From IMG/VR virus record IMGVR_UViG_3300042545_001134, positions 1 through 64,000 of that record: 64,000 nucleotides of DNA. One strand, 5' to 3'. Positions 9,980-38,050 of the stretch are shown here, piece by piece. Below the pieces are notes generated by a model, which was not told the origin of the DNA, ran no database searches, and saw only the letters and a program-made list of their open reading frames with translations. Made by a program: the position numbers and the translations under genes. Positions within the stretch are counted from its first letter, which is position 1. The number at the start of each line of letters is the position of its first letter.

Positions 9980-11110
9980 TTAACCAAAAACCCCCATCGC
10001 TTCAGCGTCCGCCATGATATCGGGGTTTACATCTGTTGATGTATTTTCATTATCTGTCGATGCAGTTGCACTTTGAGTTTTTTCTTTTGATGGTGTTAAT
10101 GCCGTAACAACACCCGCCGTTGCCACACCTACCGCCACAGCCTTTGCCCCTTGTTTTGATAATAATTTACCTAAAAATGCTTGAAGTTTAGTTAGTACAC
10201 TATCAATTGCGCGTAAAATAACTGAAATGACAGTATCTCCCTTAAATTTCTTTGCCAACGAGTTACCTACGTTTTTTAATGTGCCTTTTAATGCTGGTAT
10301 CTTAGTTGCTAATGAGTTTAACATTTTAACCATTGTAGGTGCTGCTTTTTTAACACCAACCTTTTTAATCATTGGAATTGATTTACTAAATACTTTACCA
10401 ATTGCGGCGGTCAACACTAGAGACAATGCGTCCCCAATTAAAAACATGAAAGGTGATTCCTTTCTTTCGGGGTCTTTCGGGTCATAATCATTAGTTGCGA
10501 TTTCATAGATATCTAATAACACAACAATAGCCCAAACAATTGCGTTTGTTTTTACCGCAAGTATTGAAACAACAACGTCAATAACAATACCGACACCTGT
10601 GTATAATCCACGACGAACCCATCTTAAAAATGGTAGAACTCCGTTTTTAAACACCCACTCCATACCTTTCATGATTGTACTACCGACATTCTTGACTCCT
10701 GATTTTATACCATCCCATGCAGTTGATGCTCCCGATTTAATAGTATCCCAAAGACCTTCGTTAATTATTTCACCGTTTTTAATCCATTCATAAACCATAT
10801 CTTTAGACCACTTAGTGTTCTCAAGAATATTGTTTACTTCACTATGAACACTTTCAGTGATTGTATCACCAAGTTTCGTAAGGGATTCTTTTATTAACTC
10901 GTTGAATACATGGGTATTTTCCCATATACTTCCAATTGATTTTCCATCTCCACCAGCAACAAAAACCTCGTCCATCATGATAAGGTATTTGTTATTTTCA
11001 GTTAATACAAAATCAAACACAAAATCTCTTTTTTCAACAAGACCATACATCTTTTTGATGTTCTGTTTTTCAGACTCTGTAATTACGATTTTTCTTTGAT
11101 TTGAGTACAT
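9980..11110 (-). CDS. Putative virion/membrane protein with ITES leader
   Basis: KIVITESEKQNIKKMYG; hydrophobic helices. Confidence 0.65.
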   Translation of the reverse strand: MYSNQRKIVITESEKQNIKKMYGLVEKRDFVFDFVLTENNKYLIMMDEVFVAGGDGKSIGSIWENTHVFNELIKESLTKLGDTITESVHSEVNNILENTKWSKDMVYEWIKNGEIINEGLWDTIKSGASTAWDGIKSGVKNVGSTIMKGMEWVFKNGVLPFLRWVRRGLYTGVGIVIDVVVSILAVKTNAIVWAIVVLLDIYEIATNDYDPKDPERKESPFMFLIGDALSLVLTAAIGKVFSKSIPMIKKVGVKKAAPTMVKMLNSLATKIPALKGTLKNVGNSLAKKFKGDTVISVILRAIDSVLTKLQAFLGKLLSKQGAKAVAVGVATAGVVTALTPSKEKTQSATASTDNENTSTDVNPDIMADAEAMGVFG

Positions 11111-11149
11111 AATTCTTTATTATCTATATAAATATACCGATTTATGAGT

Positions 11150-11398
11150 TTATTTTAAAGGGTTTGATTTACCTCTTTTTAATAATGAACCAACAATATC
11201 CGACCATTTGGTAACACCTACTTGATTCGCAGGACCTCGAGTCACCCCACTCTCCCATTTACCAACCTCGGGATATCCCTGTTTTGAACCAGAACTCGAT
11301 GTTCCGGCGGTTGGTTGTGCGGCTGCGGGGTCCTCACCTTGTTCGGTAATCCCACTTTTTATGAGGTTATATTGTTTCTCCGATACTATTATTTTCAT
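11150..11398 (-). CDS. Small protein with VSEKQ leader
   Basis: Likely start MKIIVSEKQ at 11398. Confidence 0.65.
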   Translation of the reverse strand: MKIIVSEKQYNLIKSGITEQGEDPAAAQPTAGTSSSGSKQGYPEVGKWESGVTRGPANQVGVTKWSDIVGSLLKRGKSNPLK

Positions 11399-11485
11399 GT
11401 TATCATATAAATATCCCAAAAAAAGTTTAAAAAAAATTTGTGATATTCTAAAAAATAAATATCTTTGTCTAAATAATAACCATAA

Positions 11486-12061
11486 ATGGTAACTAATATG
11501 AAAAATTTAATCTTTATTATTGGAGTAATACTCCTTACGGGATGTGAGAAGTATGAATTGGAAAGTCCACCCAAATTAACGGGTGGTAAGTGGATTTTAA
11601 CCGATTACGATATTATCGTAATAAGTTCAATTAGTGACGTTACAGTTGTGAAGAATGATACTGTGTGTATTAATTCGTTTAGTTTACAACATGTAGATAG
11701 TGGTAGAATCGTGATGAGACAAGACTATAATGGTACCGCATTAGATAGACGTTTTATAAAAGGAAGAACAACTTGGGAATTTGATGGTAATGATAAAGAA
11801 TTGTATTGTAACTATATCCAAATGCCGGGGGTTCCTCGACCTAACCCATTTTGGGTTAACTTATCATTGTATGATAAAAATTTAGAAATACTGAACACCA
11901 CAAATGGGTCAGTTACTAATTACACGTATCAAGCAAATGATGTTGGATACCCAAGGACTTTGACATTATTAAGCCCATCAATTGTTACGGATTTGTATAT
12001 GTCTGACGGTACTCGAGATAAGGCTGTAACTGTAAAGATTACCTTATATTTTATGAGGTAG
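11486..12061 (+). CDS. Lipoprotein
   Basis: Lipobox LLTGC after a hydrophobic signal. Confidence 0.7.
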   Translation: MVTNMKNLIFIIGVILLTGCEKYELESPPKLTGGKWILTDYDIIVISSISDVTVVKNDTVCINSFSLQHVDSGRIVMRQDYNGTALDRRFIKGRTTWEFDGNDKELYCNYIQMPGVPRPNPFWVNLSLYDKNLEILNTTNGSVTNYTYQANDVGYPRTLTLLSPSIVTDLYMSDGTRDKAVTVKITLYFMR

Positions 12062-12062
12062 A

Positions 12063-12431
12063 TTACTCGTCATAGATGGTTTCATCCATCTGTGCAAATA
12101 GTTTGATGTATTGTCCCGCCTTTGAGTTTGCCTCATCTTCAATATCCCCTCCGATATCTGCGGGTTTGACTTTTAAACGACCTTGTTCGAATTGTTTGTG
12201 GTGAACCATTTCGTGGGCAATACTTCTTAAAATATCAACCAACGCTCTGTTTTTAACATTTATCTTAACAAACTTCTCCTCATTAGAATAATTGTAGGCC
12301 GCGGTTGTTTTGAGTTTACCTCTCCCGTTCTGTAAAACCACAGTAGGACACTTCTCTAATTGAAGTTCCTTCTTTACAAATTTTACAAATTCGGATACCT
12401 TGTCTCTTTTATTCTCGTCTAAAAAACTCAT
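12063..12431 (-). CDS. Zn-metallopeptidase-like protein
   Basis: IAHEMVH (HExxH). Confidence 0.65.
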   Translation of the reverse strand: MSFLDENKRDKVSEFVKFVKKELQLEKCPTVVLQNGRGKLKTTAAYNYSNEEKFVKINVKNRALVDILRSIAHEMVHHKQFEQGRLKVKPADIGGDIEDEANSKAGQYIKLFAQMDETIYDE

Positions 12432-12517
12432 ACCAATAAATACTACGAAAAATTATTTTAGGTATACGTAAATTTGTATATATAATTAATCGGTTTTTTC
12501 ATATACTTACCAATACA

Positions 12518-13588: not shown

Positions 13589-15988
13589 TCACCAAGTAGG
13601 AAGATAAAATTGATTAAAGTGTCTTAAAATTTCATTAGACATATCTATTGAGCGATTATACTGATGTACTATTTTAAATAGTTCACCATTACTATTATAA
13701 ACCACTTTATTTCTACTAATTTGAATATTTCTAAATCTACCCTTATCAATTGGGTCGTTGAATATTGTATGTAAATGCGCCGCCAATGGTACATCTTCTC
13801 TTAATCCCGTTTTTTTCAGTATTTGAGACGCATACATTAGTTTTAAAATTATTGCTTGGTCTACTCCGTAAATTGATTTTGTATGTTCAGGAATTTTACC
13901 ATATTCATCTAAAACAATATCGGCAAATTCGGATAGTGTTTTTCTATTACCCGCAATAACCCCACAGTTTAATACTTCATACGGACCTACTGCATTTGCC
14001 ATATCATTACCATAAACATTTCCAATAACACCATAGTTCCATTTTTGGTCTTGTATCGGAATACCTTCAGATGATATAATAATATTATCCTTAGGTAGTG
14101 TATCTAAAATTTCAAACGGATTCCCTTGGAAATAGATATCACTAAAGTCCACGCACAATATTGTTTCATAATCGTGAGTATTTGCGAATTCTTTAAACGC
14201 AACTAATCTATCTAAAAATAGATTATCATAAACAGGTTCCCTATCTATAATTTCAAAATCAAACGCAGTTAATTCTCGTCTAACCGTTTCGTCTTTTTCT
14301 TTTGATGCGTCGATAACATATAAATCGTAATTATATGACGCAAAATAACTAACACTCTTTATAAATGGGAACTTAATAGATGAGTTAATATCTTTTATGT
14401 AAGTTATTACCACATTTTTATTTTTAACGTTAGTTGGTGCCAAAAATAATGGTTCTATATTATGTTTATAGATATTCTCGTCTATTTTAGTTAATGAATG
14501 GGTTCGACCATAATGGTTGGTGTCGAACATACTATCAACATTTCTATTTGGTGTGGTTCTTAAAATTCGACTACTATTACTATAGTTTACCGCTTGGAAC
14601 TCTCTATTATGATTTTGATACTTTGTATCGTATTCTACTGTATAATCGAGTAATGTCGTCACATCAACTGTTTTGATACCGGATTGGTGTAGTTTTGTGT
14701 TAAGGTCATTATCCTCAGACCCCCAACCCCAAAAACCATTTCTATAACCACCAACCTTAAAGAAATCATTATAATGCATCAATGTACTACCATAATCACC
14801 CATGTTAAAGTACGCCTCGTTTAAATTTGGCCACTTCCACTCACCATCAATAGGATAAACATCAACATGGTGAATATAGAGGAATTTATATTTGTTCTTT
14901 TTTCTAAAGTTAATAACCGAATTACAGGACAATCCGGCATTCCACTCACCAATATTATCTAACTCCGCAATTAAAATATCGTAAGTAATTCCCCTATCTT
15001 TAAAGAATTTTGGGGTTTTAACTAAATAATCTTTTAGATGTTGTTCACGATTTCTGTATGGTACAACGATTAATACGTCCTTTTCTTCTGGTTTATTTAA
15101 TGTTGCGGAACTAAACTCTAAATTATTTAGTATTTCAAATTCATTAAGACTTCTAACGGTACCTAATGGATAATCTGTTTTATATGTTGGGTCAAAATAT
15201 TTTTTTTCTGCATGCTCGTTTGATTTGTTTTCCCTATGCATCGTATTCTGAACTTCGTTGTAGTGTCTTGGTGAACCACCACCAGTGTTATATTTGTGCC
15301 AAATTAAACATTCAGGTGTCCCAAAAAAATCCCACCCATTGGTAAACGCTCTAAGTGTTTGGTCGGTTTCTTCATAGTTCCAATATAACTGTGGGTCATA
15401 TGGTAACTCTTTTACGTATTCAATTGGTGCAAAAACAAATCCAGCAGCGAATGTTGTCCCTAAAATGGGTTTATTATCACCATGGTCTAAATTACATGCA
15501 TTTTTATCGAGACCAAACCCTAAAGAGGTAACGGCCTTTCTATTAAATGCCCTAATTTCATTCTTAATGATGTTACTTTGAGTCTTACCATTTTCATAAT
15601 CAAATGCGGACGGGTAAAATGATAAAACCGGTTTTTTACTATTTGACTCTTTTAAATATTGTATAAATTTATCATCCCAATCCTTACCAAAACGCATGTG
15701 TGCATCAATTTGTAAGTAATATTTTTCTTGTTCAATAAATGTTTGAATTTTGTGTCTAACCCAAGATACCCCTTTAGTATTTTTATAATCTAAAGAGTAA
15801 ATCTCAACCTGTCGATTACCAAAATCCATTTTATAAATCTCATCAGCCTCAAAATCAGTTTGGTTAAATACAACAACCCTTATTCTATCTGGGTCTTTAG
15901 CGTTTTCATATAGGTCATTAATTGTGTTTATTAAGTCAGCATCTCTATAGGATGCAATGCTTACAAAAATTTCACAGTTTTTAATCAT
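13589..15988 (-). CDS. Multi-domain glycosyltransferase (GlcNAc-transferase-like + GT7 galactosyltransferase-like + third GT-A-like domain)
   Basis: IFVSIASYRD/LQIDAHMRF; IVVPYRNRE/GWGSEDNDL; LCVDFSDIYFQGNP/LNCGVIAG. Confidence 0.75.
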   Translation of the reverse strand: MIKNCEIFVSIASYRDADLINTINDLYENAKDPDRIRVVVFNQTDFEADEIYKMDFGNRQVEIYSLDYKNTKGVSWVRHKIQTFIEQEKYYLQIDAHMRFGKDWDDKFIQYLKESNSKKPVLSFYPSAFDYENGKTQSNIIKNEIRAFNRKAVTSLGFGLDKNACNLDHGDNKPILGTTFAAGFVFAPIEYVKELPYDPQLYWNYEETDQTLRAFTNGWDFFGTPECLIWHKYNTGGGSPRHYNEVQNTMHRENKSNEHAEKKYFDPTYKTDYPLGTVRSLNEFEILNNLEFSSATLNKPEEKDVLIVVPYRNREQHLKDYLVKTPKFFKDRGITYDILIAELDNIGEWNAGLSCNSVINFRKKNKYKFLYIHHVDVYPIDGEWKWPNLNEAYFNMGDYGSTLMHYNDFFKVGGYRNGFWGWGSEDNDLNTKLHQSGIKTVDVTTLLDYTVEYDTKYQNHNREFQAVNYSNSSRILRTTPNRNVDSMFDTNHYGRTHSLTKIDENIYKHNIEPLFLAPTNVKNKNVVITYIKDINSSIKFPFIKSVSYFASYNYDLYVIDASKEKDETVRRELTAFDFEIIDREPVYDNLFLDRLVAFKEFANTHDYETILCVDFSDIYFQGNPFEILDTLPKDNIIISSEGIPIQDQKWNYGVIGNVYGNDMANAVGPYEVLNCGVIAGNRKTLSEFADIVLDEYGKIPEHTKSIYGVDQAIILKLMYASQILKKTGLREDVPLAAHLHTIFNDPIDKGRFRNIQISRNKVVYNSNGELFKIVHQYNRSIDMSNEILRHFNQFYLPTW

Positions 15989-20287: not shown

Positions 20288-20614
20288 ATGGATTCACAGT
20301 CATTCTATACTGTTTTAATAACAGCAGTTACAGTTTTAGGTTCCGCAAGTGCTTGGAGATTCTACGAAAAAAGAGCCATGAGAAAAGAGAGGTCAGAAGA
20401 TTATATGAAAGATGAATGTCGAGAAAGGATAGCAAAATTGGAAGTCTTGTTGGAAAGGTCTTCAATAGAAAAGGATGACATGCGTTCAAAAATATTAGAC
20501 CTTACTCGTGAAGTGGCCGAACTTAGGGTAAAAGTGGAATTCTTAGAAGACAAGAACATAGAATTAAAAAAAAGTGTAACACCTAAAACAACAAGAACTA
20601 AAAAAACACAATAA
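20288..20614 (+). CDS. TM + coiled-coil protein
   Basis: N-terminal hydrophobic helix then heptads. Confidence 0.65.
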   Translation: MDSQSFYTVLITAVTVLGSASAWRFYEKRAMRKERSEDYMKDECRERIAKLEVLLERSSIEKDDMRSKILDLTREVAELRVKVEFLEDKNIELKKSVTPKTTRTKKTQ

Positions 20615-21000
20615 TGAAAAAATACGTATTAACAGAATCACAATTTAAATCCTTAATGGATAAAGTAATCACCGAAGAAAGTGGTAAGGGTAAGGGATAT
20701 GGTTGTCCTCGTTCGGGTACACTTGGTCAATGTCTACAAAAATCAGGAATTAAAGGTAAACCAATGTTCAAATTAGAAGGTCCAACCCAATTATTCTCTA
20801 TGTTATATCAAGTAATGGCTGGAGATACATGGAACGGAATTATGAATACCGTATTAGGATTGGATGGATTTTATGGTAAGGATGTAAAGAGTTATGAAAG
20901 ATACTCAAATATCAATTTAAGTATGAATCCAGGTCTTGGTGGTAAAAAAGAATCAATTCAACAAGGATACGTTTTACATTTAGAAGGTCCTTACGATTAA
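20614..21000 (+). CDS. Protein with LTESQ leader
   Basis: MKKYVLTESQFKSLMDKVITEE. Confidence 0.65.
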   Translation: MKKYVLTESQFKSLMDKVITEESGKGKGYGCPRSGTLGQCLQKSGIKGKPMFKLEGPTQLFSMLYQVMAGDTWNGIMNTVLGLDGFYGKDVKSYERYSNINLSMNPGLGGKKESIQQGYVLHLEGPYD

Positions 21001-25650: not shown

Positions 25651-25684
25651 TCAAATAAAGATATTTATAGTTTAAAGAAAAGTT

Positions 25685-26143
25685 ATGGCTAAGTTTATAT
25701 TCACAGAATCACAAATGAAAATAATAAAAACTCAGTTAAATGAGAGTAGAGAAGATACATACGATGTTGGTAAATGTGACATTAATCTTTATTATGGTGA
25801 ATTAACATATAAAGGACACGAGATTAACGACATCAGTGCTCCTGAAATTAGTTTTACATTTTATATTGATATGGATATTAAGAGTTATGGTATAAGAGGT
25901 ATTTCTCTTTATAATCCTGAAGGTCCTTCTGAAATTGAGTTGGAGGTTTCTTATTATACCGGTGAAGACGATGATGAGAGTGAAGACATAGTAACAATAC
26001 CATTAGATTGGGAAAATGTTAACGAAGATGATGGCGATAATGGGTGGATAGGTTATGAAAACCGAATCGAGATTAGATTAAAAAATGATGAAAGTGGTAA
26101 TATTGTTGTTGATTCGATGACCCTTTTCAAAAATAGTTTTTAA
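25685..26143 (+). CDS. Acidic protein with FTESQ leader
   Basis: MAKFIFTESQMK..LNES; TATTTATA at 25662. Confidence 0.7.
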   Translation: MAKFIFTESQMKIIKTQLNESREDTYDVGKCDINLYYGELTYKGHEINDISAPEISFTFYIDMDIKSYGIRGISLYNPEGPSEIELEVSYYTGEDDDESEDIVTIPLDWENVNEDDGDNGWIGYENRIEIRLKNDESGNIVVDSMTLFKNSF

Positions 26144-29042: not shown

Positions 29043-30859
29043 TATAATAAATTCTTGATGTTTTTTACATTCTCGAACAATTTATAATTGGTCGCATATG
29101 TTGCGAGATTTTCAATTTTAACCGGTCCACTTTCACGAGTACCTTTCTTTTTATCACCCAGCACGATGACGATAGACCCCTTCTCACAATCAATTTTCAT
29201 TGAGGGTAAAAAAATATCAAACTCCTCGTTTTCAATTCTATCGGAACCTTTGAATACTTTCTGTACAACATCATTTAAAATTTTACGATATTCAGCACAC
29301 GTCTTCACACCTTCAAAGTCATTGAATACTTTTTCAAAATAATCCTCAATGGGTTTTTGTAAATCTTCATATGTCACCTCATCGGTTTGGTGGTCCCAAA
29401 TACCCTCATAATCGTTATCAATATTGTAGTAACTTGCATAACCATCCAAAACATCAATCATATAATTTTCTTTTCCGTCGATGATTGTGTAATCTTTTTT
29501 TACTAGATATAGTAAAAAATAAGGTATTTTAACTTTTACAAGATTCTCTTTGGTGTAACTATCAAAGTCCATGTATTTTACAATATCATCAACTTGAGCC
29601 TGTGCTGCGTTCTCAAGGTGTATAGTATTTTTATTTACATAATCACTGGAATACCATTCCCAAATATCATCATCTTGAGTGAAATTATCATAGTGGTCCA
29701 TTTTAAATTGTTCGTAATCCGAATACCCGTATAATGTCTTTAATTCTTCACCATTTCTTTTATAATATTCCTCCAAATAGTTAGCCAACACATCTTTTAT
29801 GTAATCACTATCTTCATTGTACATTCTATCCCACAAGACTTCACTCCCATTATTAGCCTCACCCTCATAATAACTCAATGTATCTCGAGTGGTATTTAAA
29901 CTTCCGCCATATGAGGTTATAAATTCAACATTTAACCACTCACCTTCAATTTCCAACGATGCCAAATCATCATCCGTTATAATCTTTTCTAATGCATCAA
30001 TATCTTTATTGATTAATGCGGCGATTATTGGGTTGTTTTTTGCTGATGTGGAAACCAATTTATTTACCAATATCGTAGTATCGTCATCATCAAGGGCATT
30101 TAACCTTTCGATTTGAGTTTTTAGTGTACTCTCATCTACATCATCACCAATAAGTGACGGGAAAAAGAAGTGTTTCACCTCCTCATTCTTATTTAAAAAT
30201 TCTTGTATGTTGATTCTCGCATCTTCTTTATCCATATATTGTTTGGATTGAAAGTGGAGTTGATATTTTTCATTAATATCTGAGTTCTTTATTAAAATAT
30301 AAAGATGCCCCTGTGAGTGATATCTTGAATATAAACTACCTCTATCCTGATGTTTTGGGTTTAAAGATTGTGGACCCCAAGTTGTACACCATTCAGTGTT
30401 TACTCCTAAGTAACAAGATGCCTTCTCCGTGAATGGTACAAAAATCGTCCATAACTCACTTTGAAAGACCTTCCTATACTCTTTCTCATCTAATGCGGAG
30501 ATAATCGAACCAAGGTCTCTTGTGTCCTTCGCATAGTATCCTTTTACTACGTCATATAAATCATTTAATGATTTAATCTTATTTGAATCGAGTGAGACAC
30601 TATGTTTGTAAACATAATCCAAATATTCCTTTGCTCTTGGTAAATCCTCAAGTTTTAATGTTTTCTTTCTATATAAGTTAATCAACAATTTGGCAAACTT
30701 ACCAATTCGTTGAATACCATTTTCGTTTGATTTACTTTGAGGGTCAGACATAACAACTTGATTGAACTCTTCTCTTGGAATGTCCTTATAGTATGAGTTA
30801 TAAATCTCATCGGGAGTCGCCTCCAATAGTAATGATTCAAATAAATCCTCTAATCTCAT
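29042..30859 (-). CDS. Putative virion protein with PcfJ-like WCTT domain
   Basis: ASCYLGVNTEWCTT..LYILI..KYQLHF; LLLEA leader. Confidence 0.55.
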   Translation of the reverse strand: MRLEDLFESLLLEATPDEIYNSYYKDIPREEFNQVVMSDPQSKSNENGIQRIGKFAKLLINLYRKKTLKLEDLPRAKEYLDYVYKHSVSLDSNKIKSLNDLYDVVKGYYAKDTRDLGSIISALDEKEYRKVFQSELWTIFVPFTEKASCYLGVNTEWCTTWGPQSLNPKHQDRGSLYSRYHSQGHLYILIKNSDINEKYQLHFQSKQYMDKEDARINIQEFLNKNEEVKHFFFPSLIGDDVDESTLKTQIERLNALDDDDTTILVNKLVSTSAKNNPIIAALINKDIDALEKIITDDDLASLEIEGEWLNVEFITSYGGSLNTTRDTLSYYEGEANNGSEVLWDRMYNEDSDYIKDVLANYLEEYYKRNGEELKTLYGYSDYEQFKMDHYDNFTQDDDIWEWYSSDYVNKNTIHLENAAQAQVDDIVKYMDFDSYTKENLVKVKIPYFLLYLVKKDYTIIDGKENYMIDVLDGYASYYNIDNDYEGIWDHQTDEVTYEDLQKPIEDYFEKVFNDFEGVKTCAEYRKILNDVVQKVFKGSDRIENEEFDIFLPSMKIDCEKGSIVIVLGDKKKGTRESGPVKIENLATYATNYKLFENVKNIKNLL

Positions 30860-32178
30860 TATTGTGTTTTAATTGTTTTACTAAACGGTGGTATTGGTGT
30901 TAATTCAAATCTTCTATTTGGTGCGGTATCTTCCACCTTGGTTGGGGCTTGTGCTGTCCACCCTGGCCCAAACTTAGTTGTTTCACCCGCACCATAGAAA
31001 CCAAAACTAAGTCCTGTTCCCGTTAATTTTTCATTTATAATATCTGCAATTCGTTTTGCTCTTGCCTCAGATAAACATTTATTATATTCACCTCTTGTTG
31101 CCACTGATTTACACGGAGCATATTTCCCCGTTATTTTTTGTTCTGAATTGGCATCAATACTTGCGTAACCTACAATTTTAGGTGACGACTTCATAATGTG
31201 GTCCGTAAGTGGTTTACCGTGTTGATTAGCATTTGTTTTCATTTTATTCACAAACCCATCAATTTGACCCATTGATTTTCCTTCATCAATAAAGTTAGTC
31301 TCATCAAATTTAAAAACGTCAACTAATGAGAATTCAACTTTAATTACGGTCTCACTTGGAGTTTTACCCGTTGTTGTTGCGGTTCTTGGTACATCTCCCC
31401 CAATTTTCATATTGGGGTTACTATTGAAAACAAATTTCTGTAATTCTAAAAATAAACCTCCCGATTGTAGATACGCATAAACATCATTGTTCACTTTCAT
31501 TGGTAACCTATTATACTTAAAATATGTACCTAATGGGTATTCATCACCCGCGGCAACTGACTCTTTAGATGTGGCCCTATCAGGTTTACCCGTAAAACCC
31601 AATATAAAACGTCCACCATTCTGACGGTCAGTTTTAATGGTAACATCAACCATACCCTTTTCTATTTCCAACAAGTATCTTGGGTTTTTTTCAAAAAACA
31701 TCGCCACTTTAGGGTCCTCTTTTAATATGTCAGCGGCGAACGCCGTTGAGACTGCCCCAACTTTGAACATTCCGTCAAAATCTCCAACATAATAGTATTC
31801 TTTTGTTTCCTCAAGAGGTACCTCACCCTCAACCACTTTACCATTTTCAGTACCTTTAATAACAACAGAGTATGAGTCATTTGGACCTTGTTCCACTCGA
31901 ATTGTAAGTAAGTTTAATAGTTCAGTCTGTTTGTTTGGAAGAATTTCCATATTCATTCTCTCCTCGATATATCTTATCACATCGGCATCAGAAATAAAAT
32001 CAGGTTGTTCGTTAATAACTTTACTAACCAATTTAACTAAATCCGATTCGGTTAATTTAACCATTTTTTGTTTGGTCGTTGGTGGGGACACCGTTCTATC
32101 TGAGGATGTTGGTTGCTCAAGTATATTTTGAACCATATTCTTTAAATCATTCTCAGTAAGTTTTATAATTTTCGCCAT
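30859..32178 (-). CDS. Protein with duplicated LTE leader and C-terminal OmpA-like domain
   Basis: IVGYAS..YNKCLSEARA..GAGET..NRRFE. Confidence 0.65.
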   Translation of the reverse strand: MAKIIKLTENDLKNMVQNILEQPTSSDRTVSPPTTKQKMVKLTESDLVKLVSKVINEQPDFISDADVIRYIEERMNMEILPNKQTELLNLLTIRVEQGPNDSYSVVIKGTENGKVVEGEVPLEETKEYYYVGDFDGMFKVGAVSTAFAADILKEDPKVAMFFEKNPRYLLEIEKGMVDVTIKTDRQNGGRFILGFTGKPDRATSKESVAAGDEYPLGTYFKYNRLPMKVNNDVYAYLQSGGLFLELQKFVFNSNPNMKIGGDVPRTATTTGKTPSETVIKVEFSLVDVFKFDETNFIDEGKSMGQIDGFVNKMKTNANQHGKPLTDHIMKSSPKIVGYASIDANSEQKITGKYAPCKSVATRGEYNKCLSEARAKRIADIINEKLTGTGLSFGFYGAGETTKFGPGWTAQAPTKVEDTAPNRRFELTPIPPFSKTIKTQ

Positions 32179-32255
32179 AATATTAAATGTTACCTATAAA
32201 TATACCAAAATCCGTCTTTATGTTGTAGGAATAACCTTGGGTTGTGTCTTTTAAA

Positions 32256-32341: not shown

Positions 32342-32611
32342 ATGAAAGTAATTGTTTCTGAAAAAACGTTAAGTAAGGTAATTGGTAAGTTAGTTACCGA
32401 AAACTATGAATCTGAGAAATTATACCACAGAGAGTCGTTGGTGAAGAAATTATTGGTTAAAAACCAAAAAGGTTTCTTTGTTGCTCCTAAAGAGATTAGG
32501 TCATTAATCGAAAGATTACCGTATATTGAATGTACTGATTCCCAAGGTAACCCCCAAACTTGTACTAAAATACCCGAAGTACTCTACGTTTATTTAACCG
32601 GAAGATATTAA
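32342..32611 (+). CDS. Small protein with VSEK leader
   Basis: ORF track. Confidence 0.65.
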   Translation: MKVIVSEKTLSKVIGKLVTENYESEKLYHRESLVKKLLVKNQKGFFVAPKEIRSLIERLPYIECTDSQGNPQTCTKIPEVLYVYLTGRY

Positions 32612-32665
32612 TAAAAAAACCCTCATAAGAGGGTTTAATTTTTTATAAGGTATTCAAATTGGTTA

Positions 32666-32884
32666 TTAAAAGAATCTTTTAAAACTTGCTTTGATTTTTT
32701 CAACTGATTCGTTCACTAAATCATCAGTCTCATTTTCAATACCGTCTTCAGAATCGCATTCCTCACACACTTCCTCTTCGTTTTGTTCCATTTCAACTGA
32801 TTCGTCAGTTTCTTGTGTAACGAATGAATGACGACGTTCCATAATCATTTTCAATTGACTTTCTGTGATTTTAATTTTTTTCAT
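32666..32884 (-). CDS. Small acidic protein with ITESQLK leader
   Basis: MKKIKITESQLK. Confidence 0.65.
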   Translation of the reverse strand: MKKIKITESQLKMIMERRHSFVTQETDESVEMEQNEEEVCEECDSEDGIENETDDLVNESVEKIKASFKRFF

Positions 32885-32929
32885 TTTTTCGGTTTCTATA
32901 TAAATATCAAGTTATTGTAAAAGATTAAA

Positions 32930-33442
32930 TTACTTAAAGTAACCATCGATTCCAAATTTACGTACAAGTCTATTTCTTCTTTTACATGCTGGATTCTGTC
33001 TCGTACCTCCACGGAAGATTAATTTACCCAATTTTACAATAATAATAATCGCAATTAAACCGGCAACAACTATAACCGCAACCGCAGGTACTGCCACTCC
33101 GGCAATTAAAATTGTCGCACCAACTTGTTCTTGAACAACCGGTTGTTGTGTTATTGGTTGTTCAGGTTGTTTTTTAATTGATTTAACCTGTTTTAAGACC
33201 ATAATAAGGTCATTAACATCCATTGTATCCAATTTAGATTTAATGTTGTTTACAACGTCCGCATACTCCGCTGGTGGTTCCTCAATTGGACACTCAGGTG
33301 ATACTTCCATTTTCTCTTCGGGTGTTAATACGATTCCTGCCTGAGCCAACGCATTGTCAAATTGTTGTTCTTCTGTTGATTCGGTATAAAGTCCTCTGAT
33401 ACGGTTTCTTTCTTCTTCTGTTAATGTAAATTTTTGTCCCAT
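32930..33442 (-). CDS. Protein with LTEEE leader and C-terminal TM helix
   Basis: Start MGQKF at 33442. Confidence 0.65.
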   Translation of the reverse strand: MGQKFTLTEEERNRIRGLYTESTEEQQFDNALAQAGIVLTPEEKMEVSPECPIEEPPAEYADVVNNIKSKLDTMDVNDLIMVLKQVKSIKKQPEQPITQQPVVQEQVGATILIAGVAVPAVAVIVVAGLIAIIIIVKLGKLIFRGGTRQNPACKRRNRLVRKFGIDGYFK

Positions 33443-33553
33443 ATTAATGTTTATTATAAATATCATAAAAATGGGGATAGAAGTAGCGAATTCCTATCCC
33501 CGTGTCCGTGACTAGTCCCGGTCCTAAAGTGAGGTTTTCAAACCTCAACTATC

Positions 33554-34498
33554 TTAATTTGTCGGTTGCTGTACAAGACCTGGTGTCACTGTTTCAGGAT
33601 TTGATACGGTTGGTTTCAACGGTTCCATTGGTTTTAGTTCCTCAGTATCTCTTGATAAAAATTTACGTCCATTAGTGTTCCAAGCTTTTTGAGTTCTTGG
33701 ACCAAAAATACCGTATCCCTTACCATTTTGACCTTTATTAATAATACCACCATTATATCCCACGGCCCAACCTTTAGCATTTACGTCTAACCAATCTTGG
33801 AATAATTTAATTCCATTGGCATCTTTTAATTCTTTTGGTGTTGGTATCAATACTTTTTTAGGTGCAACTTTAAATTCTGGGTCTTTACATGTGTAATTTG
33901 CCATCGTTTTATTTGCCAACATTTTTCTACCGTTAGCAAAATACGTAACACCATTTATTAAGTATGACATTGTACCATCACTATATTTTTGTTGTTTTGC
34001 ACCTTTAAATCCCGTTACACATGGATACTTTAACCAAGGGTCAGTCGCGGGTGCGGCAGGTGCTGCTACAGGTGTCGCTAATAATTTGAAACTATTGGTT
34101 TTAAAATACTTAACAGATGGTTTGTATTTGTCGGCATTTGTTTCATAGGTATTATTTACCCCAATACTTTTCAAGTGTTTAGAAACCATTTCCACGGTGT
34201 ATAAATTATCCACGCCCATATCACTATTAATCCATCCCGCAACATCTAACTCTGAATATAGTTTTTTAAGTTCGGCATTTACTAATGAAAATTGTGCAGC
34301 GTCTTTAATCTTCAAAACTCCATTTCTAAATTTTGTGGGGTCAGTACCGGGACCACTAACTGATGCGTGTATCTCTTTCGCGATACCAATATTTATGTCC
34401 ACGGCTTGTTCATTTAATGGATTACCATATCCATGTTTCTTATGCATATTAAGGATTTCTTCCTTTTCTGACTCTGTTAGTAAAAAATTTTTATACAT
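33554..34498 (-). CDS. Protein with LTESE leader and peptidoglycan-binding-like segment
   Basis: IKLFQDWLD..GIFGPRTQKAW. Confidence 0.65.
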   Translation of the reverse strand: MYKNFLLTESEKEEILNMHKKHGYGNPLNEQAVDINIGIAKEIHASVSGPGTDPTKFRNGVLKIKDAAQFSLVNAELKKLYSELDVAGWINSDMGVDNLYTVEMVSKHLKSIGVNNTYETNADKYKPSVKYFKTNSFKLLATPVAAPAAPATDPWLKYPCVTGFKGAKQQKYSDGTMSYLINGVTYFANGRKMLANKTMANYTCKDPEFKVAPKKVLIPTPKELKDANGIKLFQDWLDVNAKGWAVGYNGGIINKGQNGKGYGIFGPRTQKAWNTNGRKFLSRDTEELKPMEPLKPTVSNPETVTPGLVQQPTN

Positions 34499-34616
34499 TG
34501 TTTTAGTTTTTTTATAAATATTTAATTTTATGGGGTTATCATCCGTTTAACCGAATAAAATATTATTAAAGAAAAGAAAATAGACAAATAAACCGTCTGT
34601 GATATCAATCTCTTCA

Positions 34617-35246
34617 TTACCCGCAATTCCATAATATTGGGTCAGTTTCAAATAGGTTTTTAAAATCCAAGAATATAAGTTCCGCTAGTTTCACCAAGAA
34701 ACTCTTTTGGATATCTAAACCACAACTAACACTTATACTTCCAAGACCTTCGTAAATGTGACACCTTAAAAGACGTAAAATTAACCACGCACCAATTGCG
34801 ATGAATACACCTACAGGTAATGCCAATAAAAATACTTTAACTGATTCAAATGCCGCCATTGCTCCCGCCTGTTCATTCATTTGTGCCGGTTGTTCTTGTG
34901 GTGTTGGTTGTTGTTTATCTTGTCTTTTTTGTCTTCTCATCGCCTTTAGTTCCTGAATCATCAGTTTTAACTCATCTTTCGATGCGGTTGGGAGAACGGG
35001 ATTAAGAATTGATGCAACTTTCTTTTTTGCATTTGTAATTTCGGGAGTCTCGGCGGTTGAACTTGAAACATCCTCTTTAGATACCCCAAGTTGACTTATC
35101 TCGGATGCCAATGTTTTAACAAATTGTAACCCCTGAGCGGATTCGGGACTAAAACAATTTGATTCATCCTCGTTGATTTTACCTTTACAGCAACCCATGA
35201 TAGATTTAATTCTACCTATTTCTTCGTTTAATGTTTGTTTTTTCAT
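34617..35246 (-). CDS. Protein with LNEE leader and TM helix (related to 32930 gene)
   Basis: Start MKKQTLNEE at 35246; QQP..EQ(A/V)GA-TM arrangement shared. Confidence 0.6.
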   Translation of the reverse strand: MKKQTLNEEIGRIKSIMGCCKGKINEDESNCFSPESAQGLQFVKTLASEISQLGVSKEDVSSSTAETPEITNAKKKVASILNPVLPTASKDELKLMIQELKAMRRQKRQDKQQPTPQEQPAQMNEQAGAMAAFESVKVFLLALPVGVFIAIGAWLILRLLRCHIYEGLGSISVSCGLDIQKSFLVKLAELIFLDFKNLFETDPILWNCG

Positions 35247-35250
35247 TATT

Positions 35251-36303
35251 TTATATAAATGGTTGAATAAATTTAGCATAATTAGTTCCACCATCAGGTC
35301 TACTTTCTTTGATGCCGAAATAATATAACATTTCGGGGTCATTAATACGAACTTCTTTTTGTGGAACTGTGTTCATGTTAGTAATAAATTTCTTGTCATA
35401 GGCAAAACGAACCACCCTTTCAATTTTATCGTCATCACCCCAATAAAATACCCACCTAAGGATAGGTGCGGTCCATGGGTCAGCAACCACATTTGTGTTC
35501 CATTTAATCTCATATGCGGTCATGTGTTTGTTGTCCCACTTATTTCTAAGTAACTTTTCACGTTGTTTAACAAACATATCGTCTACCGCCACCATACCAA
35601 GAGAATTTTTACCGTTAGCATAATACGACCCAGTTAAAATCATATTTGCGTTAATGTCTGTATATGTTTCAATAGTATCGGTACTCGTTTTACCCGTTGT
35701 AGTTACGGTTGTTATGTCTTTCTTGTATTTGAATACAAGTGTAACGTTCATAAACTGACCTGGGTTGGGATATTTGGTTGTATCTCTTACTTCATCCTTA
35801 ACACCACCTGTATTCAATACGATGGTTTTAAACGCAACTTTCGCAACATCAGAATCGGAGATTTTATTTTTTTTAAGGAAGTTGAATAGTGCGGGGCGAA
35901 ACGACTGTGCTCTTAACAACGCCAATTGAACATTCTTTTTATACAGGGGGTCCTCAAGGTTTTGACCTTTTGGTGCAACTGCGTAATTATTTTCCTTATC
36001 GTATGGTGTTACCTTACCTAACCATGTGTTACTTGCACCGGCTGTAAAGGTTCCATTAGTAAAAGTCATTTCACCACTTTTTAACATAGCGGGACCATTC
36101 GGTGTTGCATTAATCTTTTCCAATAATGTTTTGGTGAAGTCAGCAAGAAATGGAGTTGGGTCCGACGAGTTAACGGGATACGCCGCCTTAAAGTTAAAAC
36201 TAACTTTAACTTCAATAGGGGTTGTTACCTCATTTAATAATGATGTCCCATTCTTACCGATTAACGATTTAAGTTGGGACTCCGTGATGATGATTTTTCT
36301 CAT
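35251..36303 (-). CDS. Protein with ITESQLK leader
   Basis: MRKIIITESQLK. Confidence 0.7.
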   Translation of the reverse strand: MRKIIITESQLKSLIGKNGTSLLNEVTTPIEVKVSFNFKAAYPVNSSDPTPFLADFTKTLLEKINATPNGPAMLKSGEMTFTNGTFTAGASNTWLGKVTPYDKENNYAVAPKGQNLEDPLYKKNVQLALLRAQSFRPALFNFLKKNKISDSDVAKVAFKTIVLNTGGVKDEVRDTTKYPNPGQFMNVTLVFKYKKDITTVTTTGKTSTDTIETYTDINANMILTGSYYANGKNSLGMVAVDDMFVKQREKLLRNKWDNKHMTAYEIKWNTNVVADPWTAPILRWVFYWGDDDKIERVVRFAYDKKFITNMNTVPQKEVRINDPEMLYYFGIKESRPDGGTNYAKFIQPFI

Positions 36304-36529
36304 ATAGACTAATATTAATAAATACCTGAAACGGTATTATTGTTTAACGGTGGTTAGATAATAACTCAACCCATTATATATAATGAATTGTATATTGTCT
36401 TCACCTTCAATGGGACGGTAACGTGTCCAAATTTCGGTTAATCCTATTTCCCCTTTAATGGGTTTCATTGTTATTTTGTTTTCTTCAAATCTAATCGTAC
36501 GCATATAATATTTTTACTATAAGTACCGA

Positions 36530-36712
36530 TTAATTCCTATGAAGAATAACTTTTTTCAGTGAATCGGATTTTTCGATTGTAATTTCAATGTTAATGTTTT
36601 TCTCACCTCTAAGACGGGCAAGTTCCTTTTGTTGAAAGTAACAGATGATAAGGAGACTTATTGCTCCCGCCATACTGATGTGTTTTTGATATTTTTGAAA
36701 AAATTTAATCAT
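36530..36712 (-). CDS. Small membrane protein
   Basis: One TM helix. Confidence 0.55.
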   Translation of the reverse strand: MIKFFQKYQKHISMAGAISLLIICYFQQKELARLRGEKNINIEITIEKSDSLKKVILHRN

Positions 36713-36719
36713 TGTTCTT

Positions 36720-37268
36720 TTATTTTTTTATCCACCATTGTTGTTGATTACCAATGGCATTTATGTTGTCCTCTCCAAACATTTCGTTTACCGACTCATA
36801 TACACCAGGCCAACAGGTGCAGTAATCATCACCACAAATAAACCCACCGGGTTTTACTTTGGGTAACCAAGACTGTATATCGTTTTTAACGGAATTATAA
36901 TCATGAGCCCCGTCGATGTACACAATATCAAAATACTCATCTTCGTATAATGACGATTGTGAAACGGAATTATTCTTATGGATGTTTATAAGGTCTTTTA
37001 AGGGTATTAAATTGTTTCGAGTTATAGTTTCATAGTCCACACCCTTAACGTGTTCTGGTGACCCCTCAAAGTGGTCAATGGCGTGATATTCGAAATCAAC
37101 ACCTTTATTGATTAGGTCGACACATATCAGTGCGGTACCTCTACCCTGGTAAACCCCAATCTCGGCGATTTTTAATTTACCTGACGGGTTATCTACAATT
37201 GTATTAAATAATTCCCCTTGTTCATGTGGTTGAGCCCAACCTTCTATATTTTGATAGAAATGTTCCAT
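36720..37268 (-). CDS. Class I SAM-dependent methyltransferase (Methyltransf_24-like)
   Basis: AEIGVYQG, DIVYIDGAHDY, LPKVKPGGFICGDDY. Confidence 0.88.
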   Translation of the reverse strand: MEHFYQNIEGWAQPHEQGELFNTIVDNPSGKLKIAEIGVYQGRGTALICVDLINKGVDFEYHAIDHFEGSPEHVKGVDYETITRNNLIPLKDLINIHKNNSVSQSSLYEDEYFDIVYIDGAHDYNSVKNDIQSWLPKVKPGGFICGDDYCTCWPGVYESVNEMFGEDNINAIGNQQQWWIKK

Positions 37269-37326
37269 AATTAAGATTTACACAAATAAATATGGTCCCC
37301 TTTAATTAACGGTCCACAATCTCATT

Positions 37327-37346
37327 CCGGCGTACGAGGTTCATTT
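37327..37346. repeat. 20-bp direct repeat, copy 1 (copy 2 at 39631-39650)
   Basis: CCGGCGTACGAGGTTCATTT identical at both sites. Confidence 0.85.
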
Positions 37347-37580
37347 TTTAGAGAACATTCTCAATGCACTTATCATAAGGATGGTCATACCAACCCCGAG
37401 GGTGCAAGAAACGTCAAAAGACATATTATGAATTCCTGAATGGAACAAAGATGCGAACACCACGGCGGTTAGAATATAAATCCAAAACAACTTAATGAAA
37501 TGATACATCCCAACTGCCAGTATGGTAAATGCGCCCAAAAAGAATGCAAATACAACTTCTAATAATTTTATCATAAACAT
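37341..37580 (-). CDS. Small membrane protein
   Basis: Strongly hydrophobic. Confidence 0.55.
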   Translation of the reverse strand: MFMIKLLEVVFAFFLGAFTILAVGMYHFIKLFWIYILTAVVFASLFHSGIHNMSFDVSCTLGVGMTILMISALRMFSKK

Positions 37581-37651
37581 AAATAGAATATATATGGAAC
37601 AAAAAACCCCACCTTTAAGGGGTAGGGTTTTAATGATTTATTTTAACTTTA

Positions 37652-38050
37652 TTATTTTCTAATCGAAAGAGCACTATCCAATTCGTCATTCGTACCCTCG
37701 AATCCTGGCATTTCAGTATTATCCCTATAGTCCGTTCTACCATCATCCTCGGATTTTGTGAAACCCATAAATTTATATGCCTCTTCATCACTTTGGTTTA
37801 AAACCATTTTATTAAGACTTGTATAAAACTGTTTCATGAATGTCCATTTAATACCACCTTCTTGTTGGGGACCAACAAAATGACTATATTCATCCACTAA
37901 CATTTTTGAAATTTTGTTTGCGGCCTCATCTGCCGCCATCATAGCGATTTGAAGACCACCTAAACCTTCAGATAGTGTGGATTCATTATTAATCCCCATT
38001 ATTTCTTTAACTCGGGATAACTCTTCGTTCAATTTTATTTTGTTTGACAT
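37652..38050 (-). CDS. Protein with LNEE leader
   Basis: MSNKIKLNEELSRVKEIMG. Confidence 0.65.
   Translation of the reverse strand: MSNKIKLNEELSRVKEIMGINNESTLSEGLGGLQIAMMAADEAANKISKMLVDEYSHFVGPQQEGGIKWTFMKQFYTSLNKMVLNQSDEEAYKFMGFTKSEDDGRTDYRDNTEMPGFEGTNDELDSALSIRK

What the first reader, a model, noticed from the sequence alone, without database searches (positions are those of the whole stretch)
9980..38050. Shared N-terminal leader on about 18 unrelated proteins: a candidate capsid-targeting/cleavage signal
Seen: MYSNQRKIVITESEK (9980), MKIIVSEKQ (11150), MKKYVLTESQFK (20614), MAKFIFTESQMK (25685), MAKIIKLTENDLK repeated internally as KMVKLTESDLVK (30859), MKVIVSEK (32342), MKKIKITESQLK (32666), MGQKFTLTEEE (32930), MYKNFLLTESEK (33554), MRKIIITESQLK (35251), MKKQTLNEE (34617) and MSNKIKLNEE (37652). 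Shorter variants end LNES/IIEA/LLEA/IYEE. Most have a second L/I-x-E-[QSA] about 10-20 aa later and a TATTTAT promoter. Established: T4 internal proteins use a short N-terminal capsid-targeting sequence removed by prohead protease after Glu. Inference: a large cargo set (OmpA-like, PG-binding, PcfJ-like) loaded into the head by a portable tag, potentially useful for engineering.
Basis: partly seen in the sequence, partly recalled or inferred. Interest (0 to 1): 0.65.

Follow-up and report, generated by a model that had tools for sequence, protein, structure and literature searches.

The report
Shared leader peptide on phage cargo
A freshwater jumbo T4-like phage puts the same ~21-residue N-terminal helix, ending in its head protease's cut motif, on a dozen unrelated late proteins; this most likely loads them into the capsid like T4's capsid-targeting sequence, but no experiment has shown it.

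Summary
Twelve window ORFs carry 13 leader copies, and two more leader ORFs lie elsewhere in the 310.7-kb genome. All start with M-K-K-I-I-I-T-E-S-Q-L-K-K-phi-phi...[L/I]-x-E, and their bodies are unrelated.

The leader is found across the whole phage clade. Eighty-four leader ORFs from eight genomes fall into 59 body clusters. A profile search of 1.84 billion proteins finds 1,266 representatives, and 136 of the best 150 match at residue 1.

On orthologous bodies, three leader subtypes replace one another. All of them end in [L/I]-x-E just before a variable linker. AlphaFold2 models the leader as a loose helix running from Glu to Glu.

The genome encodes a T4 gp21-type prohead protease, and T4's enzyme cuts after L/I-X-E. 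The major capsid protein has an invariant L-I-N-E at the propeptide position. A late-promoter-like TATTTAT motif precedes both leader genes and head genes.

Cargo includes OmpA-like folds. In relatives it also includes a Tae4 amidase, a C39 peptidase, a CCA-type nucleotidyltransferase and a weak GNAT match.

Best reading: an enlarged, sequence-distinct analogue of the T4 capsid-targeting propeptide. Neither packaging nor cleavage has been tested, and no cultured relative carries the leader.

The parts
9980..11110 (-). Leader-tagged ORF, 376 aa. The leader spans aa 1-26 (nt 11033-11110) and ends L-V-E|K. The body has several transmembrane-like helices and a weak tape-measure-like stretch.
   Evidence: profile E 5.6e-8; phrog_1272 1.4e-5
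11150..11398 (-). Leader-tagged ORF, 82 aa. The leader spans aa 1-19 (nt 11342-11398) and ends I-T-E|Q. Orthologues in relatives keep the leader.
20614..21000 (+). Leader-tagged ORF, 128 aa. The leader spans aa 1-21 (nt 20614-20676) and ends I-T-E|E. It has no promoter motif of its own and directly follows ORF 20288-20614, which has one.
   Evidence: (E 7.4e-11)
25685..26143 (+). Leader-tagged ORF, 152 aa. The leader spans aa 1-20 (nt 25685-25744) and ends L-N-E|S. Three relatives have orthologues with the leader.
30859..32178 (-). Leader-tagged ORF, 439 aa, with two tandem leaders: aa 1-21 ending I-L-E|Q and aa 38-57 ending I-N-E|Q. The C-terminal domain has an OmpA-like peptidoglycan-binding fold.
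32342..32611 (+). Leader-tagged ORF, 89 aa. The leader spans aa 1-20 and ends V-T-E|N.
32666..32884 (-). Leader-tagged ORF, 72 aa, with a canonical leader and a very acidic body.
   Evidence: (E 4.6e-10)
32930..33442 (-). Leader-tagged ORF, 170 aa. The leader spans aa 1-21 and ends Y-T-E|S. The body has a C-terminal transmembrane helix.
33554..34498 (-). Leader-tagged ORF, 314 aa, with a subtype-3 leader (..T-E-S-E-K-E-E-I-L-N-M-H..) ending L-N-E|Q at aa 30. The C-terminus has only a faint PG_binding-like motif.
34617..35246 (-). Leader-tagged ORF, 209 aa, with a subtype-2 leader (..L-N-E-E-I-x-R-I-K-x-I-M-G..) ending I-N-E|D at aa 26. The body has a transmembrane segment.
   Evidence: E 1.6e-11
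35251..36303 (-). Leader-tagged ORF, 350 aa. The leader spans aa 1-25 and ends L-N-E|V. The confidently modelled body starts at about aa 28, and its first domain is OmpA-like by fold.
37652..38050 (-). Leader-tagged ORF, 132 aa, with a subtype-2 leader.
   Evidence: E 2.3e-11
11128..11135 (-). Late-promoter-like motif ATATTTAT. The same motif lies at 11407-11414, 32196-32203, 32900-32907, 33456-33463, 34514-34521 and 38067-38074 (-) and at 25661-25668 (+). The variant GTATTTAT lies at 36318-36325 (-).
   Evidence: The same motif precedes the protease, scaffold-like, portal and sheath-like genes of the genome.

Best explanation
The leader is a self-contained propeptide module about 21 residues long.

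Anatomy: a short hydrophobic strand (K-I-I-I), an N-cap Thr/Ser/Asn, and an amphipathic helix running from an invariant Glu to a second Glu. Both Glu residues sit in L/I-x-E contexts.

Proposed mechanism (inferred, by analogy with the T4 capsid-targeting sequence):
1. Late in infection the helix docks the tagged protein onto the scaffolding core of the assembling prohead.
2. Once the shell closes, the gp21-type prohead protease cuts after the boundary Glu, and perhaps after the first Glu as well.
3. The mature cargo stays in the head and is delivered with the DNA.

Where the module sits inside a longer ORF, the same cut would split a polyprotein.

Shown here: the shared portable leader; its clade-wide spread; its helix-plus-linker model; conservation of the junction motif; the presence of the protease; the matching capsid-protein motif; and the shared promoter-like motif.

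Inferred, not shown: binding to the core, cleavage, presence in virions, and ejection.
For: Portability:
- 84 leader ORFs from this genome and seven relatives fall into 59 body clusters.
- 1,266 cluster representatives worldwide match at E<=0.001, and 136 of the best 150 match at residue 1-5.

Module swapping on orthologous bodies:
- The 30859-32178 family carries one, two, or two separated leaders, and three different leader subtypes. All end phi-x-E-Q before a variable Gly/Asp/Pro linker.
- In the 35251-36303 family the [LI][LI]-x-E junction survives even where the first half of the leader is lost.

Structure: AlphaFold2 puts helices exactly at Glu9-Glu21 and Glu44-Glu57 and at aa 8-18. These have pLDDT about 40-64, disordered linkers, and confident bodies.

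Protease link:
- A Peptidase_S77 gene is present and aligns to T4 gp21, PDB 5JBL, at E 1.9e-12.
- T4 gp21 cuts after L/I-X-E (PMC9026906).
- The junction site has P3 = L/I in 51 of 58 leaders and is enriched (P 2e-18).
- The capsid protein has an invariant L-I-N-E at aa 57-60 in the window genome and all 80 clade relatives compared. This is about 15 residues downstream of the position that aligns with the T4 gp23 cut.
- The scaffold and the 243-aa core-like protein have 2-3 times the proteome density of L/I-x-E, at conserved sites.
- Both genomes at least 90% complete that carry leaders also carry the protease.

Timing: the TATTTAT motif is shared with head and tail genes.

Cargo resembles injected effectors: OmpA-like folds and, in relatives, Tae4 amidase, C39 peptidase, a CCA-type nucleotidyltransferase, an OmpA domain and a weak GNAT match.

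Precedent: T4 internal proteins are diverse and share only a capsid-targeting sequence (PMC3012670, PMC9958956).
Against: - There is no direct evidence of virion location or cleavage.
- The leader is about twice as long as the T4 sequence. From memory of the T4 sequence, it shows no resemblance to it.
- More distant T4-like phages with the same protease family lack the leader, so the protease does not require it.
- The [TSN]-E at the start of the helix and the Asn near its end can also be read as ordinary helix caps.
- Internal and C-terminal copies are not known for the T4 sequence.
- Several cargoes bind or cut peptidoglycan. That requires delivery to the periplasm, whereas T4 internal proteins go to the cytoplasm.
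Confidence: 0.55

Rival explanations
1. The helix is an uncleaved docking or oligomerisation module. It attaches diverse proteins to some common hub, such as the tail or baseplate, the portal exterior, or a non-virion complex. The L/I-x-E pattern would then be just the hydrophobic/acidic pattern of an amphipathic, capped helix.
For: - The module also occurs internally and at the C-terminus (P0059, P0060, P0067).
- Thr/Ser/Asn-Glu is a good helix N-cap and Asn a good C-cap.
- The hydrophobic positions follow an i, i+3, i+4, i+7 pattern.
- Conserved N-terminal anchors on variable bodies are usual for tail fibres and spikes (general knowledge).
Against: - A Glu at the C-terminal end of a helix is disfavoured by the helix dipole, yet it is the best-kept residue of the junction across three otherwise different leader subtypes.
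- The junction tetrapeptide equals the invariant capsid-protein L-I-N-E.
- The cargo is small, acidic, membrane-spanning or enzymatic, not fibre-like.
- Twenty residues is far shorter than known virion anchor domains.
Confidence: 0.2
2. The leader is a localisation or timing signal for late proteins that act on the infected cell's own envelope, for example in lysis, superinfection exclusion or envelope remodelling. It would not be a head-loading signal.
For: - Many cargoes are OmpA-like, peptidoglycan amidase or membrane-spanning proteins.
- The gene cluster also holds an endolysin-like gene with the same promoter motif.
Against: - The leader has no hydrophobic core, so it is not a Sec, Tat or lipoprotein signal.
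- The endolysin-like gene lacks the leader.
- The leader also sits on cytoplasmic-type enzymes: a CCA-type nucleotidyltransferase, a weak GNAT match and a weak P-loop kinase match.
- No export system that reads such a tag is known.
Confidence: 0.1
3. The shared 5' end has no role in the protein. It would be a recombination or expression cassette (promoter plus first codons) that shuffles genes in a hyperplastic region, or a translation-initiation optimum.
For: - The leader genes cluster in a variable region, and most have the same promoter-like motif at a fixed distance.
- A-rich M-K-K starts are common in highly expressed genes (general knowledge).
Against: - Synonymous codons vary freely while the amino acids are kept.
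- Copies occur inside ORFs, far from any promoter.
- Conservation extends 20 residues, with helix periodicity.
- The leader is as conserved as the folded body across orthologues down to 24% identity.
Confidence: 0.04

Closest known systems
Capsid-targeting sequence (CTS) of phage T4 internal proteins IPI/IPII/IPIII and Alt
   Same: - A short N-terminal peptide shared by otherwise unrelated, diverse, late-made proteins.
- It ends in the L/I-X-E motif cut by the gp21 prohead protease.
- The genome has a gp21 homologue and a T4-type portal/scaffold/protease/capsid gene order.
- The tag is portable.
(PMC3012670, PMC9026906, PMC9958956.)
   Different: - About 21-26 residues, against about 10 in T4.
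- The sequence is different and forms a predicted amphipathic helix.
- At least 14 tagged genes per genome, against 3-4 in T4.
- Three interchangeable subtypes.
- Tandem, internal and C-terminal copies.
- Cargo includes peptidoglycan-binding and peptidoglycan-cutting domains.
- Nothing has been shown experimentally.
Propeptides of ejection and inner-body proteins of giant phages phiKZ, 201phi2-1 and SPN3US
   Same: Jumbo myoviruses with a gp21-related protease that cuts after Glu. Many head-internal proteins lose an N-terminal propeptide. Paralogues gp53/gp54 of SPN3US share an identical 15-residue N-terminus. Propeptides contain several cut sites (PMC5694885, PMC10052503).
   Different: Those propeptides are mostly over 100 residues long. 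The cut motif is S/A/G-X-E. The sharing is between paralogues, not across dozens of unrelated folds. The phage clade is different (chimalliviruses and relatives).
Cargo-loading peptides of encapsulins
   Same: A short portable peptide that brings unrelated enzymes into an HK97-fold protein shell (general knowledge).
   Different: It is usually C-terminal, it is not removed, and it binds the shell protein itself. These are bacterial nanocompartments, not virions. I did not test for any similarity here.

Membership tests
T4-type capsid-targeting propeptide | Short N-terminal peptide shared by proteins that are otherwise unrelated | tested here: met
   no body similarity among window proteins; 59 body clusters for 84 ORFs; 136 of the 150 best global hits match at residue 1-5.
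T4-type capsid-targeting propeptide | Peptide ends in the prohead protease motif L/I-X-E | tested here: met
   58 of 78 leaders have the motif, with P3 L/I in 51 of 58 (P 2e-18); the junction motif is kept across subtypes and orthologues. Motif definition from PMC9026906.
T4-type capsid-targeting propeptide | Genome encodes a gp21-type prohead protease within a T4-like head module | tested here: met
   (PF03420, 77.6 bits against a cut-off of 27). (phrog_207; portal phrog_213; capsid phrog_138). (T4 gp21, 5JBL, E 1.9e-12).
T4-type capsid-targeting propeptide | Sequence similarity to the T4 capsid-targeting sequence itself | not tested
   No tool-derived T4 sequence was compared. From memory, the T4 sequence resembles this leader only in ending phi-x-E. 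tblastn of a 40-aa leader against 50,697 cultured phage records, which by the organism names listed include many T4-type phages, gave no hit at E<=10.
T4-type capsid-targeting propeptide | The tagged protein is incorporated into proheads, and incorporation depends on the peptide | not testable with these tools
   Needs virion proteomics or a reporter-fusion experiment. No cultured relative carries the leader.
T4-type capsid-targeting propeptide | The peptide is removed by the prohead protease during maturation | not testable with these tools
   Needs N-terminomics or an in vitro cleavage assay.
Sec/Tat/lipoprotein signal peptide | Hydrophobic core of about 10-20 residues after a basic N-region | tested here: not met
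   the consensus alternates hydrophobic and charged residues (K-K-I-I-I-T-E-S-Q-L-K-K). AlphaFold2 models an amphipathic helix. By contrast, ORFs 24541-25086 and 19040-19645 in the same window do have classical signal peptides.
OmpA-like peptidoglycan-binding domain (cargo of 30859-32178 and 35251-36303) | OmpA C-terminal-like fold | tested here: met
   OprF 5u1h E 3.7e-5, target TM-score 0.68, followed by many OmpA/Pal/MotB/TagL hits; 3td3 E 1.3e-4, target TM-score 0.50 (weaker).
OmpA-like peptidoglycan-binding domain (cargo of 30859-32178 and 35251-36303) | Match to Pfam OmpA (PF00691) above threshold | tested here: not met
   no hit even at E<5 for the window proteins. A different leader protein of a relative does match (L093:12339-13193, E 4.5e-6).
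   no such hit at E<5.

The most novel reading that the evidence does not exclude
A large clade of uncultured jumbo T4-like phages, with this member from lake water, uses one modular helix cassette as a general 'load and release' address.

Any protein fused behind it would be packed into the head, cut free by the prohead protease, and injected. In tandem or internal position the cassette would also turn single ORFs into self-splitting polyproteins.

The tagged proteins form a pool of more than a thousand sequence clusters. They include peptidoglycan binders, a Tae4-type amidase, a peptidase, an acetyltransferase-like protein and a CCA-adding enzyme. The phage head would then be an effector-delivery device comparable in breadth to a secretion system with marker-tagged effectors.
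Probability: 0.35. Interest if true: 0.75.

Novelty: new variant of a known kind. Interest (0 to 1): 0.6.

Why it matters
If the leader works as proposed, it does three things.

1. It gives a simple sequence rule for reading the injected-protein repertoire of a large group of uncultured jumbo phages directly from metagenomes. Here that is at least 14 proteins per genome and more than 1,000 sequence clusters overall, nearly all of unknown function.

2. It offers a second portable packaging tag, with a different sequence from the T4 capsid-targeting sequence that is already used to load foreign proteins into T4 heads.

3. It points to cargo that acts on the cell wall. That bears on how large myoviruses cross the envelope of their hosts. 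The hosts are probably Bacteroidota, but this was not tested.

The general principle is already known from T4 and the phiKZ-like phages.

Tried and rejected
- Complex prediction of scaffold + protease + 40-aa leader gave no verdict (score 0.01, mark 0.32). It counts neither for nor against binding.
- A word-index search restricted to leader residues 1-40 returned only four orthologues, so it says nothing about how widespread the leader is.
- tblastn of a canonical 40-aa leader against 50,697 cultured phage records found nothing at E<=10.
- The leader profile gave no hit at E<=0.1 in Rhodothermus phage RM378, Microcystis phage Mel-JY01 or LR756511. It gave two weak hits in LR756508, one of which (L104) I translated and found broken by stop codons. 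It gave one weak hit in Flavobacterium phage immuto, E 0.007.
- The subtype-2 profile hit none of those five records. It recovered its three training copies plus one weak hit in the own genome.
- Pfam, PHROGs and NCBIfam gave nothing usable for the window cargo. A sequence search of solved structures found nothing for 30859-32178.
- BLAST of the ~150-aa insert of the long orthologues (P0006) against all fetched loci found no separate gene of that kind.
- The contig that carries the three-leader ORF P0059 is only 3.2 kb long and gives no context.
- No RNA run holds the region, so I did not lay reads and expression is untested.
- Rejected idea: that the leader is basic and pairs with the very acidic scaffold. 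The mean net charge of the leader is only +0.8.
- Rejected as members: the tail-fibre-like proteins P0068 and P0116. Their internal 'I-T-E-S-Q-V' repeats mimic the leader core.

Full report
**Context**

The window is the first 64 kb of a 310,691-bp IMG/VR virus record, about 35% G+C, with a CheckV completeness estimate of 93%. It has a T4-type head module at 276.5-285.3 kb:
- major capsid protein (phrog_138, E 1e-65);
- a very acidic 395-aa scaffold-like protein;
- prohead protease (PF03420 at 77.6 bits; phrog_207; aligns to T4 gp21, PDB 5JBL, E 1.9e-12);
- a 243-aa core-like protein in the position of T4 gp67/68;
- portal (phrog_213);
- large terminase.

By capsid protein, the nearest database phages are distant, at 30-40% identity: an uncultured 484-kb phage, Rhodothermus phage RM378 and Flavobacterium phage immuto. 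IMG/VR holds at least 596 contigs with a capsid protein related to this one; the best 80 are 63-82% identical. The region of the finding occurs in 24 lake-water or freshwater DNA runs from 2016-2024, and in no RNA run.

Yes. All twelve quoted N-termini are present.

The consensus comes from 78 aligned leaders of this genome and seven relatives. It reads M-K-K-I-I-I-T-E-S-Q-L-K-K-[IL]-[IV]-K-K-[IL]-[IL]-N-E, followed by an acidic or polar stretch. Two further leader subtypes occur:
- M-N-L-Q-E-N-I-Q-R-I-K-E-M-M-G-L-x-x-E, in window ORFs 34617-35246 and 37652-38050 and at genome position 275214;
- ..E-S-E-K-x-x-I-L-x-M-H.., in window ORF 33554-34498.

The bodies are unrelated. Codon choice for the conserved residues varies. 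Enrichment at N-termini is significant for a simple core pattern (12 observed, 3 expected, P 1.7e-5).

The leader profile is specific. It finds 14 N-terminal hits in this genome and none at E<=0.1 in three distant T4-like genomes. One of those is 595 kb.

I do not count them.

**How widespread is the leader?**

In ten large relatives, eight have 3-16 leader hits each, clustered in one region of the genome. The two without hits are fragments of 37-38% estimated completeness.

Eighty-four leader ORFs from eight genomes fall into 59 body clusters.

An exact DNA pattern for M-K..T-E-S-Q-L-K-K finds 41 IMG/VR contigs, 13 of them over 100 kb. Eleven of these were searchable. All eleven have 1-14 leader hits. 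Both that are at least 90% complete have a Peptidase_S77 gene. The four without one are 29-75% complete.

A profile of 36 leaders was searched against 1.84 billion cluster representatives. It gives 1,266 proteins at E<=0.001. In 136 of the best 150, the match starts at residue 1-5. A few of these hits are unrelated tail-fibre repeats (P0068, P0116).

No Pfam, NCBIfam or PHROG model covers the leader. Full-text searches for the concept returned only the T4 and SPN3US literature.

**Anatomy**

AlphaFold2 models of two window proteins were built from 30 and 23 homologues. They place a helix exactly from the first conserved Glu to the second: Glu9-Glu21 and Glu44-Glu57 in ORF 30859-32178, and aa 8-18 in ORF 35251-36303. 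Confidence in these helices is low (pLDDT about 40-64). They are followed by a disordered linker and then a confident body with pLDDT 80-97. The leader is therefore not part of the fold it is attached to.

The Thr/Ser/Asn before the first Glu is a typical helix N-cap. The hydrophobic positions follow i, i+3, i+4, i+7.

**The junction**

A [LIVMF]-x-E with its Glu 9-17 residues after the first Glu is present in 58 of 78 leaders, against 22% of other N-termini (P 2e-18). P3 is Leu or Ile in 51 of 58. P2 is most often Asn, and P1' is most often Gln.

Orthologue families show what is under selection.
- In the family of ORF 30859-32178 (35 homologues, down to 24% identity), most members have one leader and the window copy has two in tandem. 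Four members have leader, a ~140-aa insert, a second leader, and then the same body. The same body carries all three leader subtypes. Every version ends phi-x-E-Q before a linker of variable length.
- In the family of ORF 35251-36303, the stretch between helix and junction varies in length, but [LI][LI]-x-E is kept. It is kept even in three members that have lost the first half of the leader.
- Elsewhere, single ORFs carry two or three leader-tagged modules, or a copy at the C-terminus (P0059, P0060, P0067).

**Link to the protease**

T4 gp21 cuts after Glu in the motif L/I-X-E. The first ten residues of IPIII suffice to target proteins into the T4 prohead core and are then removed. The T-even internal proteins are diverse and share only that sequence (PMC9026906, PMC9958956, PMC3012670, PMC5694885).

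This genome shows four matching features.
- The capsid protein of the window genome and all 80 clade relatives compared has an invariant L-I-N-E at residues 57-60, followed by a variable small-residue stretch.
- Residue 24 of mature T4 gp23 aligns with residue 68 here. The T4-equivalent cut therefore lies near residues 45-60.
- L-I-N-E matches the consensus at the leader junction.
- The scaffold-like and 243-aa core-like proteins have 2.5 and 3.7 L/I-x-E sites per 100 residues, against 1.2 for the proteome. Most scaffold sites are conserved in 92-100% of 26 orthologues.

**Timing**

[AGT]TATTTAT lies 16-32 nt upstream of 10 of 14 leader genes, against 46 of 348 other genes (P 2e-6). It also precedes the protease, scaffold-like, portal, sheath-like and other structural genes. 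I read it as a late-promoter-like element, but this is inference. Two of the four leader genes without the motif directly follow, on the same strand, a gene that has it.

**Cargo**

The window cargo has no family assignment by sequence. By fold:
- the C-terminal domain of ORF 30859-32178 is OmpA-like (OprF 5u1h, E 3.7e-5, target TM-score 0.68);
- the first body domain of ORF 35251-36303 is more weakly OmpA-like (E 1.3e-4, target TM-score 0.50).

Three window cargoes have transmembrane segments. ORF 9980-11110 has a weak tape-measure-like stretch.

In relatives the same leader precedes:
- a poly(A)/CCA-type nucleotidyltransferase (E 2e-40);
- a C39-like peptidase;
- a Tae4 peptidoglycan amidase (E 1.7e-12);
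- an OmpA domain;
- weak matches to GNAT, P-loop kinase, SprT and phosphatase families.

The 'PG-binding' label for ORF 33554-34498 rests on a faint motif only. 'PcfJ-like' is unsupported.

**Interpretation**

The simplest account of all these features together is a capsid-targeting propeptide of the T4 kind. It is enlarged to a ~21-residue helix cassette and used on many more proteins. The junction Glu would be the maturation cut. The first Glu could be a second cut, which would help clear the peptide as described for other phages (PMC5694885), or it could be only a helix cap.

I put this reading at about 0.55. No experiment or proteome bears on it, the leader shows no evident resemblance to the T4 sequence (from memory, not compared with a tool), and the peptidoglycan-directed cargo implies delivery to the periplasm.

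Three rivals remain:
- an uncleaved docking helix for some other common hub (0.2);
- a signal for late, envelope-directed proteins of the infected cell (0.1);
- a non-protein cassette effect (0.04). Synonymous variation and the internal copies argue against this one.

Chance is excluded.

**Novelty**

The principle is known from T4 and from the phiKZ/SPN3US group. This particular leader appears undescribed, as do its helix form, its three interchangeable subtypes, its tandem and internal use, and its breadth of cargo. I class it as a new variant of a known kind.

Noticed in passing
window 1100-1528 (+) and 6451-6857 (+); tRNAs at 149-605 (+): The phage carries its own trans-translation pair. 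SmpB matches PF01668 at E 1e-40, and the tmRNA has the tag peptide GNVYNNMEVAGLLATSKVAA. Four tRNAs (Met, Gly, Gln, Ser) lie nearby.
   Followed up: partly
window 61900-63327 (-): A TnpB/Cas12f-like protein: OrfB_IS605 plus the Cas12f1-like TNB domain, E 1.4e-14.
   Followed up: no
window 38117-38548 (-): A cyclophilin-type peptidyl-prolyl isomerase (E 5e-42) lies directly beside the leader gene cluster.
   Followed up: no
window 16458-16892 (-); L091:6804-7154 and L092:11493-11843: Homologues in relatives start with the canonical leader. The window copy instead starts M-I-K-F-F-D-I-L-N-E-S, followed by a CxxC..CxxC segment. This looks like a case of leader replacement.
   Followed up: partly
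proteins P0006, P0008, P0010, P0013 (orthologues of window 30859-32178); P0059, P0060, P0067: These single ORFs contain two or three leader-tagged modules, and P0067 has a leader copy at the very C-terminus. If the junction is cut, they would be polyproteins.
   Followed up: partly
proteins P0068, P0116 (global search): These tail-fibre-like proteins have 7-8 internal repeats of G-I-T-I-T-E-S-Q-V-T-G-L. In P0068 the repeat continues ..S-N-T-G-H-T-H. The repeats mimic the leader core and give false positives for any short leader pattern.
   Followed up: no
window 13589-15988 (-), 19040-19645 (-), 24541-25086 and 25105-25650 (+), 23586-24425 (-), 6893-8032 (-): Other genes in the region:
- a GlcNAc/GT7 glycosyltransferase;
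- a non-specific endonuclease whose N-terminus looks like a signal peptide;
- at 24541-25086, a CAP-family protein (Pfam); its neighbour 25105-25650 has a similar N-terminus and was not scanned; both have ..G-F-S-Q / ..Y-G-Q-type signal peptides (by eye);
- an endolysin-like PG_binding_1 + GH19 protein with the late-promoter motif but no leader;
- two DUF2589 proteins.

   Followed up: no
L102:1501-1992 (Flavobacterium phage immuto, MW353176.1 111631-): This is the only cultured-phage ORF with a faint leader-like N-terminus (M-K-K-Q-I-L-S-E-Q-F-R-R-M-Q-K-L-A-G-I-I-T-E-S-Q). The type-1 profile gives E 0.007, and the subtype-2 profile gives no hit.
   Followed up: partly
genome 92582-93895 (-), 87834-88073 (-), 272752-273477 (+), 280961-281692 (-): These are further late-promoter genes with leader-like but sub-threshold N-termini, for example M-K-K-T-L-Q-E-E-L-E-R-I-H-E-I. 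They include the 243-aa core-like protein between the portal and protease genes.
   Followed up: no
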